Positions 18,429-49,344 of a stretch of 64,000 bases of DNA are shown piece by piece. The notes below the pieces were generated by a model. It searched no databases. It was given only the letters and a program-made list of their open reading frames with translations, and was not told the origin of the DNA. Both the position numbers and the translations under genes were made by a program. Position 1 is the first letter of the stretch; every line of letters begins with the position of its first letter. Where the stretch lies: positions 62,001-126,000 of the IMG/VR virus record IMGVR_UViG_3300041411_000080. One strand, written 5' to 3'.

Positions 18429-18458
18429 ATGATATAAATCTCAACTTTTTTCTATTGC
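18429..18458 (-). promoter_or_regulatory. Repeated promoter-like motif GCAATAG-N10-AGATTTATATCAT (copy 2)
   Basis: 29/30 identical to 338-367. Confidence 0.6.
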
Positions 18459-34100: not shown

Positions 34101-35618
34101 GGTTCCGCTGATCAGAAAGTGATTCTTGATCGTCATGAAGTATGGCGCGAGTTGAACGATCCGACAGTTGCCACCATCGAAGACTCGAACCCAATTGCTA
34201 ACCTGCGTGAGCAAGAAGCAATGACCTATCGTGGGTCGGGTGGTCGAGCTGCTGTATCGATGGTTGCTCGTACCCGTGTGTATGGTGATAACGATCGGGG
34301 GATTATCTCTGAATCGACAGTTGACTCTGGTGACGTAGGTATTATTGCTTACATGACTCCTGATGCTAACTTCACTTCCATGCGTGGTTTGACTCGCACG
34401 TTTGATGAGTCTGTTGATGCTAAGTCTAAGTTGTTCTCTACCTCTGCACTCTTGGGTGTAGGTATGGCACACGATGACATGAAGCGTATCGGCTTTGCGT
34501 CGATTCAACAGCAACAAGGTTTGTATGCAGATGGTTACGACCTCTCTCCAGTTCGTACTGGTTATGAGCAAGTGATCGCACAACGTACATCGAGTATCTT
34601 TGCGACCTCAGCTGATCAAGACGGTGAAGTTATCTCCGTTGACAAACATGCTGTACTTGTGAAGTATGCCGATGGTGAAATTGAATCTGCTCCACTGGGC
34701 ACGATTCATGGTTCTGCTGCTGGTGTGGTTTATCCACATGACTTGGTGACCGATCTTAAGAAAGGTGACAAAGTAAAACGCGGTGACACAATCTCATACA
34801 ACCGTAAGTATTTCAAGAAGGATCGCTACAACCCTAATCAAGCATCTTGGATGCCTGGGGTTATTGGCGTGGTTGTATTTAGTGACAACCTCGATACCCT
34901 CGAGGACGGATCTGTTGTTTCGGAATCCATGGCTGTTAAGTTGAACACACAGACCGCTGACGTGAAGAACGTTATCGTTCGGTTCGACCAACATGTCCGG
35001 GATCTGGTTAAAGTGGGTGACCACCTCGACCTGAATTCAATTCTATGTATTATTGAAGATCCTGAAACTGCGGGTAACACGCTGTTTGATGAAGCTTCTA
35101 TTGAGACACTCAAACGTCTCTCGGCTGCCACACCTACTGCTAAGGTAGTTGGTACGGTATCTCGAATCGAATGTTTCTATCACGGTGACCTAGATGACAT
35201 GTCTGACAACCTGCGTTCAATCGCAGAACGTTCAGATGAAGAACGTGCTGAAGCTGCACGTCAACGAGGGCGCAATGCTCACTCCGGTGAAGTAGATTCC
35301 TCCTTCCGTATTAAAGGTCAAGTGCTGGAACCAGATAGCATGGTTATTCGTATTTACATCGACCATGATATTCCATTCGGTACGGGTGACAAAGCTGTAC
35401 TGTGTAACCAGATGAAGACTGTTATCTCTCGTGTGATGACTGGTACTAACACTCTGGAAGATGGCACGCCAATCGATATCATCTTCGGCAATACGTCTGT
35501 AGAAGAACGGATGGTAATGTCTCCGAAACTAATCGCAACCACTAGCATGCTCTTGAAGCAACTCTCCAAACACATTGCTGGTGTATACCGAGGAACTAAA
35601 CATGCAAAAGCAAAGTAA
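31173..35618 (+). CDS. Virion RNA polymerase beta N-terminal subunit, phiKZ gp178-like
   Basis: 1481 aa; DSGDVG, QQQ, RTGYE, EDG, GDK and KTVISR beta-like motifs. Confidence 0.9.
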   Translation: MRLKIIQFLRDYGLRQIGELQSPRLHAIKKFDFPMETIYHFWDDNTAVIGPSQVDPIIAKLKGKVFIEHFTQLETLDGSPKRTGVLPITLLNDFRKQHRFFKPLRRDESVRLNQQNVALFNYNMLNPLYRYIASYKATYYRWCNNAATMWTGVANAVERFPQWNHFIELHVPERIPTIAQFKQLETSQNQHLLELFNTGSLLNLFDLYRYLGLERKTSYISKIPKAALAQINFFVRVQGSFFVINLGKLDEWRTQTEEEAEADAIEAAAQKVALENNDKEALFAMGFESYIDDFGMEAYFKPEVLQRRFISLMTTLVEYAHGGGTLIENDANVQGNNLLQAFKEITEEQPVAPVDPDDEEELDEEKPKVVEEEVVEVDATEVGEPLSKVYKQFDLDILQVTFEPPPELDLERTTLHIENDEMSEAAVKTLKVEERKPGTPARQEEFTTGDEMLDGVAKRAYRLAKTNMISERSFEQAVDQAMSYETMPDPFGSGLTVKEAMQYSAEDFTVPVDAFPDKATIMDKAMLKSVHKPMMRKYVKTLLPKDILNAIMFVQRQGVSVTDIKIRENEDVMNHTQTFTVTVKPVRAPASNLEFTIPVIDKDGRFLSNGVTYRQRIQRADIPIRKVNPMKVALTSYTNKTFVLRSERADNNYDKWLTRQLDVKARDESNNIISNPKFAEIDLSEFQGLPRVYTALATKFSAFDNGDIHFYFNYPKREEHFQTKYGITASNVERDGMVLVGAYNNTPVVVDQQGVFYLQESMTDLEPMGTIVDLAGLNLTKAPLESVDVKIGGKDIPLGLVLGYQFGFNNLLDKLGVEYTAYPRGTKGVVIQPDEWVLAFNDEVLVFPRSDYKAMLVLGGMRRYHKSLRNYSRYDFNRKDVYFRILAEQDMGARFLKEIEFLFEAWLDPITKGLLEEMGEPTDFEGLLYRSVELLMNDWSPNEVDGAYMRYRGYERIAGQVFSSLSKAVKRFNNREGSADQKVILDRHEVWRELNDPTVATIEDSNPIANLREQEAMTYRGSGGRAAVSMVARTRVYGDNDRGIISESTVDSGDVGIIAYMTPDANFTSMRGLTRTFDESVDAKSKLFSTSALLGVGMAHDDMKRIGFASIQQQQGLYADGYDLSPVRTGYEQVIAQRTSSIFATSADQDGEVISVDKHAVLVKYADGEIESAPLGTIHGSAAGVVYPHDLVTDLKKGDKVKRGDTISYNRKYFKKDRYNPNQASWMPGVIGVVVFSDNLDTLEDGSVVSESMAVKLNTQTADVKNVIVRFDQHVRDLVKVGDHLDLNSILCIIEDPETAGNTLFDEASIETLKRLSAATPTAKVVGTVSRIECFYHGDLDDMSDNLRSIAERSDEERAEAARQRGRNAHSGEVDSSFRIKGQVLEPDSMVIRIYIDHDIPFGTGDKAVLCNQMKTVISRVMTGTNTLEDGTPIDIIFGNTSVEERMVMSPKLIATTSMLLKQLSKHIAGVYRGTKHAKAK

Positions 35619-41783: not shown

Positions 41784-42108
41784 TTTTGTACCTGTCGAAA
41801 ATGGATGGGCTTTTGAGGTAGCCGACGATAACTTCGGCAGTCTTCCAGTGATCCACCGGCCCGTGAAGCGTGAGCTTATCGGTCACTTTACCTTCTTCAT
41901 TGTGCAGCTCTACCGAGAGACCTTCCCCCGGAGCAATGATCACCTTGGCTTGTTGCGGCAGCCCTACTGGAGTTACCACGTAGATCCAGACTAGTCCTTG
42001 GAACCGTGGCTCTTCGATGAAGGCTTTGAGTTCGAAGTTCTTGTTATCCAGAGTGTGGATACACTCGATCAGCTTAAGGCCGTTTTGCAGTTCTTCAGCG
42101 ATATGCAT
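41767..42108 (-). CDS. Hypothetical protein, I-x2-YL-x2-P paralog family
   Basis: C-terminus TAEVIVGYLKSP; AAGGAG RBS. Confidence 0.7.
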   Translation of the reverse strand: MHIAEELQNGLKLIECIHTLDNKNFELKAFIEEPRFQGLVWIYVVTPVGLPQQAKVIIAPGEGLSVELHNEEGKVTDKLTLHGPVDHWKTAEVIVGYLKSPSIFDRYKNADRS

Positions 42109-42110
42109 TA

Positions 42111-42419
42111 TTACTCCTTGAACGCTTGGGTTGGGTTATGCAGATAATCGATAATCTGCTGGGCTGATTCTTTGATATTACTTTCGGTGACTTCCAAACC
42201 CGTGTCGTATTCACCCTTGGCATTCCAGAGTGTTACGGTACAGGCTTCACCTTCGATTACTTTGATGAGTGCGCGAGCGCCTTCATCGATCAAGTGCAAC
42301 GTTACCGAATGTGCTGCACCGGTGTTGGCCAACAAGACAATCTCGTGGTTTTTCCGGTCCAGCCTATTCAGTTCCTTAATCAGGGCAAAGTAATTCGCTA
42401 CCATGACAGAAACTTTCAT
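42111..42419 (-). CDS. Hypothetical protein, I-x2-YL-x2-P paralog family
   Basis: C-terminus SAQQIIDYLHNP; GGAG RBS. Confidence 0.7.
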   Translation of the reverse strand: MKVSVMVANYFALIKELNRLDRKNHEIVLLANTGAAHSVTLHLIDEGARALIKVIEGEACTVTLWNAKGEYDTGLEVTESNIKESAQQIIDYLHNPTQAFKE

Positions 42420-42442
42420 GACGTATACTCCAACGGAAGGTT

Positions 42443-42469
42443 ATAAAAGCCCCCTCCGAAGAGGGGGCT
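42443..42469 (-). terminator. Intrinsic terminator, cUUCGg loop
   Basis: AGCCCCCTC-CGAA-GAGGGGGCT 42448-42469. Confidence 0.75.
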
Positions 42470-42477
42470 AAATGTTA

Positions 42478-43269
42478 TTACCAGGTACGATGACCGGTGG
42501 CAACAACCTCGATATCATCACCGAGTTCAACCTTAACGATCTGAGGTAACTCCACGGCATCTTCGATCGTTTCTTCAATGTGACGCAACAGCTCTTCGTT
42601 TTTCCGAGTGGCCTCCTCGACCACATGTACTGACTCATTGGAGGTATGCATCATTACTGCTACAGCCGCGATCGTGGTAGTTACCGCCAGAATGGTGGGA
42701 GCATTCTCGACTATTACATCGCCGAACGGAACAAGGTAGTTATCCTTGAAACGCTTATACCACGAATCGTTTTCAGCAGGAGCAGGTTCTGGTTTCTTTT
42801 TGGGCGTATCGGTGAATGGAGTCTTACGATAATCACCTCGCCCGTTCTCGTAAATACGATAGCACGGTGCGACGTGATCGCTCGACTTGCTCATCGAGGG
42901 ACCAAAGGACTGTAGTTCTTTTTCAAGTTCTACGATCGAGTAACCAGCTACATCAACGACAGGCTGAAAAGCTTGAACCCACGGCCAGTTCTCCCATGGG
43001 AAACCAGTCAGGTCTTCCTTAAGTGCATCAAGGTTGACATCGACCAGTTCCTTACGCAGGTAACGATCACCGCGTTGATCACCCAGCATCCTGAAGGAGT
43101 AGGTAATCAGCTGTTCAGGGTTTTCGACATGGTTAGACAACAGAGCACCTTTAATGCGCTCAGTCAGCATCTCATATCGGTCAATCACTTCAGCCATATT
43201 GACGGTTCGGTAGTTAGCCGTCTCGCCATACGTGTCGATCACGTAGTGTACAGTGTAGATTTTTTCCAT
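42478..43269 (-). CDS. Membrane protein with C-terminal module paralogous to 48454..48726 (start revised to MEKIY)
   Basis: AGGTGG RBS; TM helix ILAVTTTIAAVAVMM. Confidence 0.7.
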   Translation of the reverse strand: MEKIYTVHYVIDTYGETANYRTVNMAEVIDRYEMLTERIKGALLSNHVENPEQLITYSFRMLGDQRGDRYLRKELVDVNLDALKEDLTGFPWENWPWVQAFQPVVDVAGYSIVELEKELQSFGPSMSKSSDHVAPCYRIYENGRGDYRKTPFTDTPKKKPEPAPAENDSWYKRFKDNYLVPFGDVIVENAPTILAVTTTIAAVAVMMHTSNESVHVVEEATRKNEELLRHIEETIEDAVELPQIVKVELGDDIEVVATGHRTW

Positions 43270-43370
43270 GGTCCACCTATTGAATTTACTTGATTGAATT
43301 GTTGAAAATGGGGGGTTCCCCAACCCCCCTCACCGCAAGTCAATAACCCAATAGATGCCGCGGCTATCTA

Positions 43371-43508
43371 TCAGCTCTTGTTATCGGTGAATTTACGATA
43401 GGCTTTTATGCCCAAGTAAGTACAAGCTGCCGCTGTAATACATGCCTCCAGCATGCGGCGGGTTTTCTTAACGTTATCCTTTTTATGTTCCTTGTTGTCT
43501 TGTTGCAT
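43371..43508 (-). CDS. Unannotated 45-aa microprotein MQQDNKEHKKDNVKKTRRMLEACITAAACTYLGIKAYRKFTDNKS
   Basis: AGAGGTAATA RBS identical to neighbour; mildly hydrophobic helix flanked by basic residues. Confidence 0.65.
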   Translation of the reverse strand: MQQDNKEHKKDNVKKTRRMLEACITAAACTYLGIKAYRKFTDNKS

Positions 43509-43655
43509 GTGGATCTATTACCTCTTAGTGAATGTAACAACATGTAGAAACGGCTGCTCTTAGGGGCAGTTTTCCCCCACCGTTCCTAACGTCCCCCTGA
43601 GAAACTACCCAGAGGACCGGCACTACAGAGTTAAATCCAACTTAACCCCTATTGG

Positions 43656-43772
43656 TTACGTGTCCATCCTTACCGCGATGGTATCACGGGCTACATAGAG
43701 AACCGACAGTGTCGTTGCGACAGCGCCGGCGGTGATGATTACAGCAATTTGCCACTTTTGCTTAGTGCTCAT
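43656..43772 (-). CDS. Unannotated 38-aa membrane microprotein MSTKQKWQIAVIITAGAVATTLSVLYVARDTIAVRMDT
   Basis: AGAGGTAATA RBS; single TM helix; first gene after early promoter. Confidence 0.7.
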   Translation of the reverse strand: MSTKQKWQIAVIITAGAVATTLSVLYVARDTIAVRMDT

Positions 43773-43856
43773 CTTTTATTACCTCTAGGTTATTGGTACC
43801 AATAGCACATGGATTGACTCAGCAAACAACACTTTATCTTTCCATTATGCACAAAA

Positions 43857-43873
43857 GTAATATAGCGTTTAAA
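43857..43873 (-). promoter_or_regulatory. phiKZ-type early promoter TTTAA-AC-GC-TATATTAC
   Basis: Matches copy at 2813-2829 at 15/17 positions. Confidence 0.7.
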
Positions 43874-43886
43874 AGGGTTCTAATAA

Positions 43887-43917
43887 CATAAAAGCCTCCC
43901 CGAAGGGAGGCTATGTC
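43887..43917 (-). terminator. Intrinsic terminator, cUUCGg loop
   Basis: GCCTCCC-CGAA-GGGAGGC with CATAAAA and TATGTC flanks. Confidence 0.8.
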
Positions 43918-45085
43918 AATTGGAGGACTCAACGAAGTACGGATATAGGTTTTTAAGGAGCCCTATGCCCGATTCTACGCGATAGAACGGTGCAGCCAGT
44001 AAAGCGTCACGGTATTTAGCATCGGTCGACAGAACGGCTTTAGCGGCGTCTGAGGCGGTGTTGATATATTGGAAGGTCCATACCTTATCTACCCGCCACG
44101 GTGCATCAGGGTTACCGGTTGCTACAGTACGATCCACTTCAAACCAACCTGACATCAAGCGATTCATGATACTCACGAGCTTACGTGCTTCATCTACGTA
44201 GTTAGGTACAGTCTGGGCGCCACTAGGATCTGGGATTGCTGGGCCAGTTGGGTTATTAGGGTCGGGGATCATCACCGGATATGGGCCGCCGGGATGGATA
44301 CCTTCAGGGAATACGTAACCTGCCAACAACGTTTGTGGGAATAGTGGGTTGTCGGCAACGAGAGCGGCGTCACCACCATGTTCCATCAATCGGTCAATTA
44401 CGGCAAGGCTGGTAGACGGTGAGATAGAATCAGATGCACGTTTAGTGACACTGAATCGGAATTCATCGTCATAGTTGTAGTCGTATGTGTTCTTCTCAGC
44501 GTTCCACTTCGCTCCAAAGGTTTCGTCAACCAGTTGAGGGATACCCCAATCAGACACTTCACCGAGGATACCTTTAACCAGCGCAGCTTGTGCCCCTAGG
44601 TCAAACACCCCGATCAAACGGTTACCCGATAGATCACCGATGAAGTCTACGATACCCGATACGTTCTTGAAGTTACCATCTTTGAAAGTACGAGTAGCCC
44701 CATCATACACCATCTTAACGGAATCGATCATGGTATTAGCGCCACGAACGTAACCAGTACCTTCATCAATACCCGTCAGGTCTCCGAAGATGCTACGCTC
44801 GACGCCTTCGGCCAAGTCTGAGATGGCAGCACGGGAACCACCCAACGCGTCTTTAATACGCTGCTGAGCGGCTGGTAGATCTATACCGCTAGCCTTGAGT
44901 TGGTTACCAATCCCCTTGACCATTTTGGTAGCACTACCAATGATACCACCTAGGTCAGTATCGAATGCTGAAATCTTTGAAGCTAATTTATTCTTGAGTT
45001 CTGGGTTGGCATCTGTATAGACATCAACCTCAGCAATCTTGTCTGTAGGTAGACCGGTAAAAGTTGGAAGAGTTAATGGTAACAT
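43916..45085 (-). CDS. Probable virion structural protein (gp174-region; start revised to MLPLTL)
   Basis: GGTG RBS just after the 45117 terminator; ~389 aa; synteny. Confidence 0.6.
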   Translation of the reverse strand: MLPLTLPTFTGLPTDKIAEVDVYTDANPELKNKLASKISAFDTDLGGIIGSATKMVKGIGNQLKASGIDLPAAQQRIKDALGGSRAAISDLAEGVERSIFGDLTGIDEGTGYVRGANTMIDSVKMVYDGATRTFKDGNFKNVSGIVDFIGDLSGNRLIGVFDLGAQAALVKGILGEVSDWGIPQLVDETFGAKWNAEKNTYDYNYDDEFRFSVTKRASDSISPSTSLAVIDRLMEHGGDAALVADNPLFPQTLLAGYVFPEGIHPGGPYPVMIPDPNNPTGPAIPDPSGAQTVPNYVDEARKLVSIMNRLMSGWFEVDRTVATGNPDAPWRVDKVWTFQYINTASDAAKAVLSTDAKYRDALLAAPFYRVESGIGLLKNLYPYFVESSN

Positions 45086-48419: not shown

Positions 48420-48455
48420 CATATTAGCCCTCCCATTTAAGGAGGGCTTTATGTC
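48420..48455. terminator. Bidirectional terminator
   Basis: AGCCCTCC-CATTTAA-GGAGGGCT 48426-48448 with CATATT and TTATGTC flanks; convergent. Confidence 0.75.
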
Positions 48456-48726
48456 AGTCTGTCCGGTTACCATGTCCTATGACTTCAAAGTTATCGCCTA
48501 TCTCGACTCTAACTATTGAGGGGACTTCCATTGCTATTTGAATCTTTTCTTCGATGTTATCTAAAACTGTTTGATTACGTCTTGCTGACTCGTCTGCATC
48601 ATTAGAAGCTTTCAACATCATACCTACGGCAATGACAGATGTTGCTGTAGCTATTACTACTGGAATGTTCTCTGATAGCGTATTCTTAATTCTGTTGTAC
48701 CATGAAGGTACTCTTTGTGCTGTCAT
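48454..48726 (-). CDS. Small membrane protein, paralog of C-terminal module of 42478..43269
   Basis: SWYNRIKN..ENIPVVIATAT...VEIGDNFEVIGHG vs SWYKRFKD..ENAPTILAVTT...VELGDDIEVVATG. Confidence 0.75.
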   Translation of the reverse strand: MTAQRVPSWYNRIKNTLSENIPVVIATATSVIAVGMMLKASNDADESARRNQTVLDNIEEKIQIAMEVPSIVRVEIGDNFEVIGHGNRTD

Positions 48727-48820: not shown

Positions 48821-49285
48821 TTATTTCTTCCCTTTAGTAGGGTTACTACTATCACTCATGAAACGTTTGTAAAGTACAGATGCAGTAACAGCTATAGCTA
48901 AACCGATTACGATGAGTTGTGAAGCGTCTTCAACCCCAGCATTAGGGTTAGGTGGTTTTATGTTGTTATCAGGCTCTTGTGGTGTCACAGGTACCTCATA
49001 GTTGATCTTGTATGGAATACCGAGTAGTCGATTGTGATCTACTTCCCGGATAGTGAATTCAGTTACAGTATCTACAGTTAATTGACGATAGACGAACCCT
49101 GTTGCGATTGACGCATAAATGAATCGATAGCTTGCGCCACCATCTACAGACACAGCCTTCACACGCATACCGCGGTAATACGTATCTACGCTGTACACCT
49201 TAGCTCTAAGCAATGGATCATGAAACATATCCATCGGATGCTTACAACCAAGTTTTCTCATAGTCCCAAACAACGATTGATCCAT
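48821..49285 (-). CDS. Hypothetical protein with C-terminal TM anchor
   Basis: LIVIGLAIAVTASVLY followed by KR. Confidence 0.7.
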   Translation of the reverse strand: MDQSLFGTMRKLGCKHPMDMFHDPLLRAKVYSVDTYYRGMRVKAVSVDGGASYRFIYASIATGFVYRQLTVDTVTEFTIREVDHNRLLGIPYKINYEVPVTPQEPDNNIKPPNPNAGVEDASQLIVIGLAIAVTASVLYKRFMSDSSNPTKGKK

Positions 49286-49314: not shown

Positions 49315-49344
49315 ATGATATAAATCTGAAATAAAATCTATTGC
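49315..49344 (-). promoter_or_regulatory. Repeated promoter-like motif GCAATAG-N10-AGATTTATATCAT (copy 3)
   Basis: Both blocks and 10-nt spacing conserved. Confidence 0.6.

What the first reader, a model, noticed from the sequence alone, without database searches (positions are those of the whole stretch)
43371..43873. Two unannotated microproteins directly behind an early promoter
Seen: the 590-bp gap in the ORF track holds a TTTAA-AC-GCTATATTAC promoter, then a 38-aa TM peptide (43656..43772) and a 45-aa basic/hydrophobic peptide (43371..43508). Both have the identical RBS AGAGGTAATA. They lead into a membrane protein (42478..43269). Known: TATATTAC promoters are read by the injected vRNAP. 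Inference: immediate-early membrane effectors, for example for superinfection exclusion, early infection vesicle formation or blocking membrane defence effectors.
Basis: partly seen in the sequence, partly recalled or inferred. Interest (0 to 1): 0.6.

Follow-up and report, generated by a model that had tools for sequence, protein, structure and literature searches.

The report
Conserved early microprotein genes, jumbo phage
Two tiny genes (38 and 45 codons) behind an early-type promoter of a phiKZ-like giant phage are real, conserved protein-coding genes. One is already annotated in phage 201phi2-1 as gp262, and what either does at the host membrane is still unknown.

Summary
The window is part of a 320,858-bp phiKZ-like jumbo phage genome, a distant relative of Pseudomonas phage 201phi2-1. 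At 43850-43886 (-) lies a full match to the published 201phi2-1/phiKZ early-promoter motif. It is one of 26 such sites in the genome, all on the minus strand.

ORF38 (43656..43772) is a clear single-pass membrane peptide. A 38-40-aa homologue sits upstream of the gp263-like gene in all 15 lineages examined. It equals 201phi2-1 gp262, so it is not new.

ORF45 (43371..43508) is found only in part of the clade (9 lineages) and is under strong purifying selection (dN/dS 0.09-0.26). Its helix is only marginally hydrophobic.

Both genes lie with the gp263-like bitopic membrane protein between two strong terminators, which suggests one operon. The 128-nt spacer before ORF45 is a conserved RNA structure with compensatory changes, and it pairs with the ORF45 ribosome-binding site.

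Membrane microproteins directly behind early promoters recur at least five times in this genome. Early timing is inferred from the motif alone. The proposed functions (superinfection exclusion, EPI vesicle, anti-defence) remain untested. This is an ordinary but well-supported annotation gain, with a small new RNA element.

The parts
43893..43912 (-). Intrinsic terminator hairpin plus T-run ending the upstream gp174/gp261-like virion gene
   Evidence: It is conserved in all relatives directly before the promoter.
43850..43886 (-). Early-type (vRNAP-type) promoter: ATTAGAA box, TTTAAA box, TATATTAC core (43857-43864) and conserved GTG (43850-43852). The TSS is probably the last G, near 43850 (inferred).
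   Evidence: It matches the published 201phi2-1 motif (PMC7058600). The TSS position is inferred by analogy with AR9 early promoters, motif-6N-G (PMC5312081).
43792..43803 (-). Perfect 12-nt palindrome in the 5' leader just upstream of the ORF38 SD. It is unique in the genome and invariant in the five closest relatives.
43777..43786 (-). Shine-Dalgarno region of ORF38 (AGAGGTAATA)
43656..43772 (-). ORF38: a 38-aa single-pass TM microprotein, orthologue of 201phi2-1 gp262
   Evidence: KD19 is 2.13, the N-terminus carries +2, and dN/dS is 0.24-0.70. It is present in 15 of 15 lineages.
43511..43638 (-). Conserved structured RNA spacer, a four-way junction. Its closing helices pair an anti-SD (CUCU...) with the ORF45 SD.
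   Evidence: 91.6% of cells are paired against ~40% in slid controls, 11 pairs show compensatory change, and 0 of 500 shuffles reach the covariation score. No Rfam match.
43516..43525 (-). Shine-Dalgarno region of ORF45 (AGAGGTAATA; 12-nt spacing to ATG), inside helix 2 of the RNA element
43371..43508 (-). ORF45: a 45-aa protein with a Lys/Arg-rich N-terminus and a marginally hydrophobic helix. It defines a clade-restricted small-protein family.
   Evidence: Variable columns by codon position are 13/9/33, and dN/dS is 0.09-0.26.
43310..43329 (-). G/C-rich hairpin after ORF45 with a short T-run, possibly an attenuator or stabiliser. Two of its pairs show compensatory change.
   Evidence: It is not called a terminator by the scan.
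43270..43359 (-). Segment B (43348-43359) is complementary both to the ORF45 stop region (43366-43375) and to the SD region of the next gene (43270-43284). This may be an alternative-pairing device.
   Evidence: Statistical support is weak.
42478..43269 (-). gp263-like 263-aa bitopic membrane protein: a folded N-domain, a TM segment near residues 190-212 and an acidic conserved C-tail
42450..42465 (-). Intrinsic terminator closing the three-gene unit

Best explanation
The locus is a small, probably early operon of a 201phi2-1-like nucleus-forming jumbo phage. Its order is: terminator, vRNAP-type early promoter, ~77-nt leader, ORF38, structured 128-nt spacer, ORF45, hairpin, gp263-like membrane protein, terminator.

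Shown:
- Both small ORFs are protein-coding genes under purifying selection.
- ORF38 is a classical N-in single-pass TM peptide of the gp262 family. It is always linked to the gp263-like gene.
- ORF45 is a lineage-restricted accessory protein with a basic N-terminus and a conserved, weakly hydrophobic helix.
- The spacer before ORF45 is a conserved RNA fold that contains the ORF45 ribosome-binding site in a helix.

Inferred:
- The injected virion RNAP transcribes the unit at the start of infection.
- ORF38 inserts into the host inner membrane and acts together with the gp263-like protein in an early envelope-directed task. Superinfection exclusion or membrane remodelling is the likeliest class of task.
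- The RNA fold throttles or times ORF45 translation by occluding its SD.
For: Promoter:
- It fits the extended consensus, and the motif shows strong strand bias and genome-wide enrichment.
- The same motif is published for 201phi2-1 and phiKZ.
- vRNAP uses this promoter class in phiKZ.
- Two RNAP beta-like genes are present in this genome.

Coding:
- ORF45 shows a third-position bias of 13/9/33 variable columns and dN/dS of 0.09-0.26.
- ORF38 has dN/dS of 0.24-0.70 out to 201phi2-1 and Viktualia, with length fixed at 38 aa in 14 of 15 lineages.
- Gene callers called both ORFs on independent contigs.

Linkage: ORF38 lies upstream of a gp263 homologue in 15 of 15 lineages.

TM character: KD19 is 1.9-2.4 with a positive N-terminus.

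RNA fold.

Operon limits: strong terminators lie only before the promoter and after the 263-aa gene.

Genome context: 9 of ~24 first genes behind such promoters carry a strong TM segment, and 5 are microproteins.

Weak hint of transcription: a soil metatranscriptome holds one 212-nt contig identical to 43494-43705.
Against: - There is no direct evidence of transcription timing or translation. The RNA-library contig could be DNA carry-over.
- No homology, fold or family hit assigns a function.
- ORF45's helix is below the TM threshold.
- In whole-transcript folding all three SDs are only partly paired, so occlusion is not clear-cut.
- The anti-SD helix is invariant, so it carries no covariation of its own.
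- The leader of ~77 nt is longer than at the other promoters of the class.
Confidence: 0.6

Rival explanations
1. ORF45 is mainly a regulatory upstream ORF. Its translation to the stop codon remodels alternative RNA pairings, and so sets translation of the gp263-like gene. In this model segment B pairs either with the stop-codon region or with the SD of the next gene. The peptide itself would be secondary.
For: - Segment B is complementary to both partners in the window clade.
- Analogous three-part arrangements with different sequences are visible in L089 and L090.
- Masking the stop region shifts the predicted SD accessibility in 4 of 8 lineages.
- ORF45 is present or absent without loss of gp263.
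Against: - Purifying selection on the amino-acid sequence is strong, with 10 invariant residues across 9 lineages. A pure ribosome-delivery ORF does not need this.
- Duplex energies against shuffles are weak (z from 0.05 to -2.4).
- The folding predictions disagree between lineages.
Confidence: 0.15
2. The microproteins are membrane-active toxic peptides, in the style of type I toxins or holin/antiholin. The phage would use them for host shut-off or timing, with SD occlusion keeping the dose low.
For: - The peptides are small and hydrophobic or basic.
- The ORF45 SD is buried in a long-range helix. From general knowledge, this is how translation of hok/tisB-type toxin mRNAs is restrained.
Against: - There is no sequence similarity to any toxin or holin family.
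- An early promoter is unexpected for lysis functions.
- No antisense RNA signal was looked for or seen.
- The constant linkage of ORF38 with a larger membrane protein suggests a subunit role instead.
Confidence: 0.1
3. The gap is essentially non-coding. It would encode a structured leader or small RNA, and the two ORFs would be chance open frames.
For: - The spacer is a conserved RNA structure.
- Several non-coding blocks are as conserved as the ORFs.
- The only metatranscriptome contig lies on the spacer.
Against: - The codon-position pattern and dN/dS are well below 1 in the ORF frames.
- The frames stay open with fixed length in 9-15 divergent lineages, down to ~40% protein identity of the neighbouring gene.
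- Conserved SD sequences precede both ORFs.
Confidence: 0.03
4. The promoter motif is not early in this lineage. It would be used by the non-virion RNAP or throughout infection.
For: Timing has been measured only in phiKZ, not in 201phi2-1-like phages. The motif here is much longer than the phiKZ core.
Against: - The TATATTAC core is identical to the phiKZ early core.
- Genes behind it are non-structural, and some encode small membrane proteins.
- The virion gene upstream is separated from it by a terminator.
Confidence: 0.1

Closest known systems
Pseudomonas phage 201phi2-1 gp262 (YP_001956985.1, hypothetical protein, 38 aa)
   Same: - Same length.
- Same position between the gp261 (phiKZ gp174-like) gene and gp263.
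- Same promoter type upstream.
- Alignable TM peptide with a conserved K/R-W near the N-terminus, then G, T and Y.
   Different: About 40% identity to the window copy. 201phi2-1 has no ORF45 and only an ~80-bp spacer with one hairpin before gp263. The function of gp262 is unknown; no paper in the library discusses it.
phiKZ / 201phi2-1 early promoters read by the virion RNAP
   Same: The TATATTAC core, the upstream A/T boxes and the downstream GTG match the published 201phi2-1 consensus position by position.
   Different: Activity and timing are untested in this phage. A second subclass with a TATATCAT core also exists in this genome.
Small early membrane proteins of T-even phages that mediate superinfection exclusion (T4 Imm, Sp). 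Comparison from general knowledge.
   Same: They are small, early-expressed, inner-membrane-anchored phage proteins.
   Different: No sequence or family similarity was found. No phenotype is known. This is a resemblance in kind only.
Translational control by SD occlusion in long-range mRNA helices (RNA phage MS2 coupling, hok/tisB mRNAs, ermC-type leader switches). Comparison from general knowledge.
   Same: The SD of ORF45 lies in a conserved helix with an upstream anti-SD. Possible alternative pairings sit next to an upstream stop codon.
   Different: No Rfam family matches. The direction of regulation is unknown, the thermodynamic predictions are inconsistent between lineages, and no antisense RNA or drug-sensing leader is evident.

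Membership tests
201phi2-1 gp262 microprotein family | A ~38-aa ORF immediately upstream of a gp263 homologue and downstream of the gp261/gp174-like gene | tested here: met
   Found in 15 of 15 lineages.
201phi2-1 gp262 microprotein family | Alignable sequence with a central TM helix and conserved K6, W7, G16, T20, V24 and Y26 | tested here: met
   Alignment A6. KD19 is 1.9-2.4 in all members.
201phi2-1 gp262 microprotein family | Protein-level selection | tested here: met
   dN/dS is 0.24-0.70, including pairs with saturated dS.
phiKZ-type early (virion RNAP) promoter | TATATTAC core with the extended 201phi2-1 consensus | tested here: met
   Published motif in PMC7058600.
phiKZ-type early (virion RNAP) promoter | Intergenic position, co-oriented with the downstream gene, and genome-wide over-representation | tested here: met
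   26 sites on the minus strand and 0 on the plus strand, each ahead of an SD and ORF.
phiKZ-type early (virion RNAP) promoter | Transcription within minutes of infection, independent of new protein synthesis | not testable with these tools
   Only contig-level RNA libraries are available. One 212-nt contig lies at 43494-43705.
Superinfection-exclusion membrane proteins (Imm/Sp type) | Sequence or profile similarity to a described family | tested here: not met
   No Pfam or PHROG hit of note. No Atlas lead.
Superinfection-exclusion membrane proteins (Imm/Sp type) | Blocks secondary infection when expressed | not testable with these tools
   Needs an experiment.
Type I toxin-like peptide | Small hydrophobic peptide with SD occluded in mRNA structure | tested here: inconclusive
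   The ORF45 SD lies in a conserved helix, but its hydrophobicity is marginal. ORF38 is hydrophobic, but its SD is not clearly occluded.
Type I toxin-like peptide | Cognate antisense RNA; toxicity | not tested
   There are no strand-specific RNA data. Toxicity needs an experiment.
Any described RNA family (Rfam 15) for the spacer | Covariance-model match | tested here: not met
   No match up to E = 1 in 42000-45000. No tRNA or tmRNA.

The most novel reading that the evidence does not exclude
The two structured spacers would form a ribosome-sensing RNA cascade on an early vRNAP transcript. This cascade would set the order and ratio in which three membrane-directed proteins are made: the ORF38 peptide, the ORF45 accessory and the gp263-like protein. 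Together they would form a phage-built inner-membrane complex acting at the early infection (EPI) vesicle stage of chimalliviruses.
Probability: 0.08. Interest if true: 0.6.

Novelty: new member of a known kind. Interest (0 to 1): 0.3.

Why it matters
The work gives a firm annotation of two genes that length cut-offs miss.

- It shows that 201phi2-1 gp262 heads a conserved microprotein family tied to the gp263-like membrane protein.
- It defines a second, rare small-protein family (ORF45). Only two further 50%-identity clusters were found among 1.84 billion representatives.
- It adds an undescribed conserved RNA fold.

TM microproteins sit directly behind at least five early-type promoters of this genome. 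That pattern suggests that early membrane targeting is a general, unstudied part of chimallivirus take-over. It can be tested in the cultured relative 201phi2-1. Taken alone, the locus is not surprising to a specialist.

Tried and rejected
- tblastn of the two microproteins against 50,697 phage records gave nothing. This was a false negative caused by their length, because synteny then revealed gp262 and the Viktualia copy.
- Pfam and PHROGs gave no meaningful hit. There was one weak PHROG of unknown function for ORF38 (E = 0.027), and DUF808 far below cut-off for the 263-aa protein.
- ESM Atlas feature search gave only sub-threshold hits.
- The AlphaFold model of the 263-aa protein has mean pLDDT 64, with the N-domain at ~80-90. 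Foldseek against PDB gave nothing significant. BFVD returned only 201phi2-1 gp263 and an 86-aa 201phi2-1 protein.
- Complex prediction of ORF38 with the TM and tail part of the 263-aa protein returned no answer (score 0.02). This is not evidence either way.
- There are no paralogues of either microprotein in the genome.
- A 16-nt conserved block scanned in IMG/VR and JGI metagenomes gave 68 loci, of which only one was a true relative and was already known.
- RNA evidence came from Logan contigs only and amounts to one metatranscriptome contig.
- The SD-occlusion test for the 263-aa gene by duplex energy against shuffles was weak and inconsistent. Whole-transcript folding was not decisive.
- The tiny ORF (three codons) just after the promoter in the window has no SD and is not kept in L011 or L015. 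It was rejected as a gene.

Full report
**Where the window lies.** The window is bases 62001-126000 of a 320,858-bp virus record with direct terminal repeats. DNA and protein searches place it among phiKZ-like jumbo phages. The nearest cultured relatives are Pseudomonas phages 201phi2-1 and Viktualia. The flanking proteins are 43-60% identical to theirs. The genome has two RNAP beta-like genes, as expected for a phage with virion and non-virion RNA polymerases. All genes of the locus are on the minus strand.

**The promoter.**
- The TATATTAC core is at 43857-43864. Counted as an 8-mer in the window it is not above chance: 2 found against 1.25 expected.
- In the whole genome it occurs 16 times on the minus strand and 3 on the plus strand. 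The reversed control gives 4 and 1.
- The minus-strand copies share a long consensus: an ATTAGAA box, a TTTAAA box, the core, then four bases and GTG.
- A weight matrix built from them finds 26 sites of at least 8 bits on the minus strand and none on the plus strand. The best score in shuffled sequence is 3.3 bits. The site in question scores 54 bits, the second best.
- The consensus is the one published for 201phi2-1, and its core is the published phiKZ promoter (PMC7058600 Table 2).
- In phiKZ the co-injected virion RNAP starts from 32 AT-rich early promoters of this kind (PMC10914365).
- A strong intrinsic terminator (43893-43912) separates the promoter from the upstream gene. That gene is a homologue of the phiKZ gp174 virion protein.
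- Early timing in this phage is therefore a well-founded inference, not an observation. The start site near 43850 is inferred by analogy with AR9 early promoters.

**ORF38.**
- The 38-aa product (P0001) has one strongly hydrophobic stretch (KD19 2.13), almost no hydrophobic moment and a +2 N-terminus.
- tblastn missed relatives, but synteny found them. 201phi2-1 gp262 is a 38-aa annotated hypothetical protein at the same place. Viktualia has the same ORF, annotated with an upstream GTG start.
- I then followed homologues of the neighbouring 263-aa protein through IMG/VR, ENA and Logan contigs. A 38-aa copy (40 aa in one case) lies upstream of that gene in all 15 lineages examined (alignment A6).
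- Pairwise dN/dS is 0.24-0.70, including comparisons where synonymous sites are saturated.
- ORF38 is thus a real gene, but not a new one.

**ORF45.**
- The 45-aa product (P0002) has a Lys/Arg-rich N-terminal half (net +4). It is followed by a conserved helix flanked by RR and R/K-K.
- Its KD19 is 1.09 in the window and 1.08-1.51 across the family. This is below the usual TM threshold, and the helix is not amphipathic.
- The word search found three 45-aa clusters. Contig retrieval added members of 38-48 aa, giving nine lineages in all (alignment A7).
- It is absent from 201phi2-1, Viktualia and four metagenomic lineages, so its distribution is patchy.
- Among five close relatives the variable alignment columns fall 13/9/33 on codon positions 1/2/3. 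dN/dS is 0.09-0.26. Ten residues are invariant.
- A profile search of 1.84 billion representatives found only two true further clusters and one repeat artefact.
- The genome has no paralogues.
- ORF45 is a genuine, rare, clade-restricted small protein. Whether it spans the membrane is open.

**Ribosome-binding sites.** AGAGGTAATA occurs exactly twice in the genome, before these two ORFs. In relatives the ORF45 site keeps AAGAGG but varies after it. The spacing from GAGG to the ATG is 12 nt in all of them, which is long.

**Operon structure.** Strong terminators are found only before the promoter and after the 263-aa gene, at 42450-42465. The hairpin after ORF45 (43310-43329) keeps its pairing through two compensatory changes. 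Its T-run is short, so the scan does not call it a terminator. The three genes are therefore most simply one transcription unit, possibly with attenuation at the internal hairpins. GC-rich hairpins after ORF38 occur in every lineague examined, mostly with poor T-runs.

**A conserved RNA fold.**
- The 147-nt spacer between ORF38 and ORF45 folds with z = -2.7 against shuffles.
- In six sequences the consensus is a four-way junction.
- On the named structure 91.6% of cells are standard pairs, against 37-50% when partners are slid.
- Eleven pairs show changes on both sides, and no shuffle of 500 reaches the observed covariation score.
- Compensatory changes lie in the two inner hairpins and in the outer closing helix.
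- The second closing helix pairs an upstream CUCU-containing block with the ORF45 SD. It is invariant, so it neither gains nor loses support from covariation.
- No Rfam family and no tRNA matches. The conserved blocks are single-copy in the genome.
- The simplest reading is that ORF45 translation is restrained by SD occlusion.
- In two lineages a local hairpin next to the ORF38 stop competes with the closing helix. That would make occlusion depend on upstream translation, but predictions differ between lineages. In whole-transcript folding all three SDs are only partly paired.

**After ORF45.** A 12-nt block (43348-43359) is complementary both to the ORF45 stop region and to the SD region of the 263-aa gene. 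Lineages L089 and L090 show similar three-part arrangements with other sequences. However, duplex energies against shuffles are weak (z from 0.05 to -2.4). Lineages without ORF45 show no consistent signal. I keep this as a hypothesis only.

**The neighbour and the genome context.**
- The 263-aa protein has a confidently modelled N-domain without structural relatives, one borderline TM segment and a highly conserved acidic tail.
- The TM-plus-tail module recurs as a 90-aa protein at 48454..48726.
- Of about 24 first genes behind early-type promoters, nine have a strong TM segment. Five are microproteins under 60 aa.
- The site between the gp174-like gene and the head protease is a variable cassette slot across Pseudomonas chimalliviruses. 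It is empty in phiKZ and holds other small genes behind a similar promoter in PhiPA3 and Phabio.
- A preprint reports that specific early phiKZ proteins associate with the lipid EPI vesicle (10.1101/2024.03.24.586471).

**Expression data.** The stretch occurs in rhizosphere, plant, soil, freshwater and food metagenomes from 15 studies. All runs are contigs. One soil metatranscriptome holds a single 212-nt contig identical to 43494-43705, that is the structured spacer with its flanks. This fits a stable RNA fragment, but DNA carry-over cannot be excluded.

**Verdict.** The promoter assignment is sound by homology. The functional proposals remain open. ORF38 is a member of a known but uncharacterised family. 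ORF45 and the RNA fold are small additions. Nothing here is categorically new.

Noticed in passing
L009:2228-2252; L010:2228-2250; L092:1222-1245; L090:1340-1365; L091:1630-1662; L094:1225-1260; L095:1038-1072: In 7 of 15 relatives the leader between the early promoter and the ORF38 homologue carries a strong SD followed by a mini-ORF of 1-4 codons. In Viktualia and L092 it is a bare start-stop (ATG TAG). The window clade has lost it. It may be a ribosome-loading or mRNA-protecting device, or a remnant of a deleted gene.
   Followed up: partly
L001:1470-1560 (G000 13729); G000 positions 182548, 219187 and 290432 (outside the window): Four further TM microproteins (45, 55, 58 and 39 aa; KD19 2.0-3.1) are the first ORF behind early-type promoters. 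Membrane microproteins are therefore a recurring early theme of this phage.
   Followed up: partly
window 48454-48726 (-) and 48821-49285 (-): A 90-aa protein is a paralogue of the TM and acidic-tail module of the 263-aa protein (43% identity). It follows a 154-aa protein with a C-terminal TM segment, behind a TATATCAT-type promoter at about 49322.
   Followed up: partly
window 18429-18436 (-) and 49315-49322 (-); elsewhere in G000: There is a second promoter subclass with a TATATCAT core and a TTTCAGATT upstream box, about 10 sites in the genome. All 26 promoter-like sites of both subclasses lie on the minus strand.
   Followed up: partly
window 43792-43803: A perfect 12-nt palindrome (contains a KpnI site) lies directly upstream of the ORF38 SD. 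It is unique in the genome and invariant in five relatives; in L088 it is shortened by one base but can still form a hairpin. It could be an operator or a small RNA hairpin.
   Followed up: partly
L016:2960-3030; L017:2823-2873; L018:2860-3110: The slot between the gp174-like virion gene and the head protease is a variable cassette site. It is empty in phiKZ. PhiPA3 has a terminator, a TATATCAC promoter and two unrelated small genes there. Phabio has a different set.
   Followed up: partly
L001 (G000 13729), L007 (G000 176497), G000 298376: Three early-type promoters are followed right after the GTG by the same inverted repeat (GGTGATA...TATCACC). This would put a hairpin at the 5' end of the transcript.
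   Followed up: no
window 43494-43705: The only piece of the 2-kb stretch present in a size-fractionated soil metatranscriptome is a 212-nt contig covering the structured spacer. This may hint at a stable processed RNA.
   Followed up: partly
window 35151-35537 (+): An RNAP beta-like domain (PF00562, below cut-off) lies in a 1482-aa open frame on the plus strand. This is probably a virion RNAP subunit. The second copy lies at G000 224063-224704 (-).
   Followed up: no
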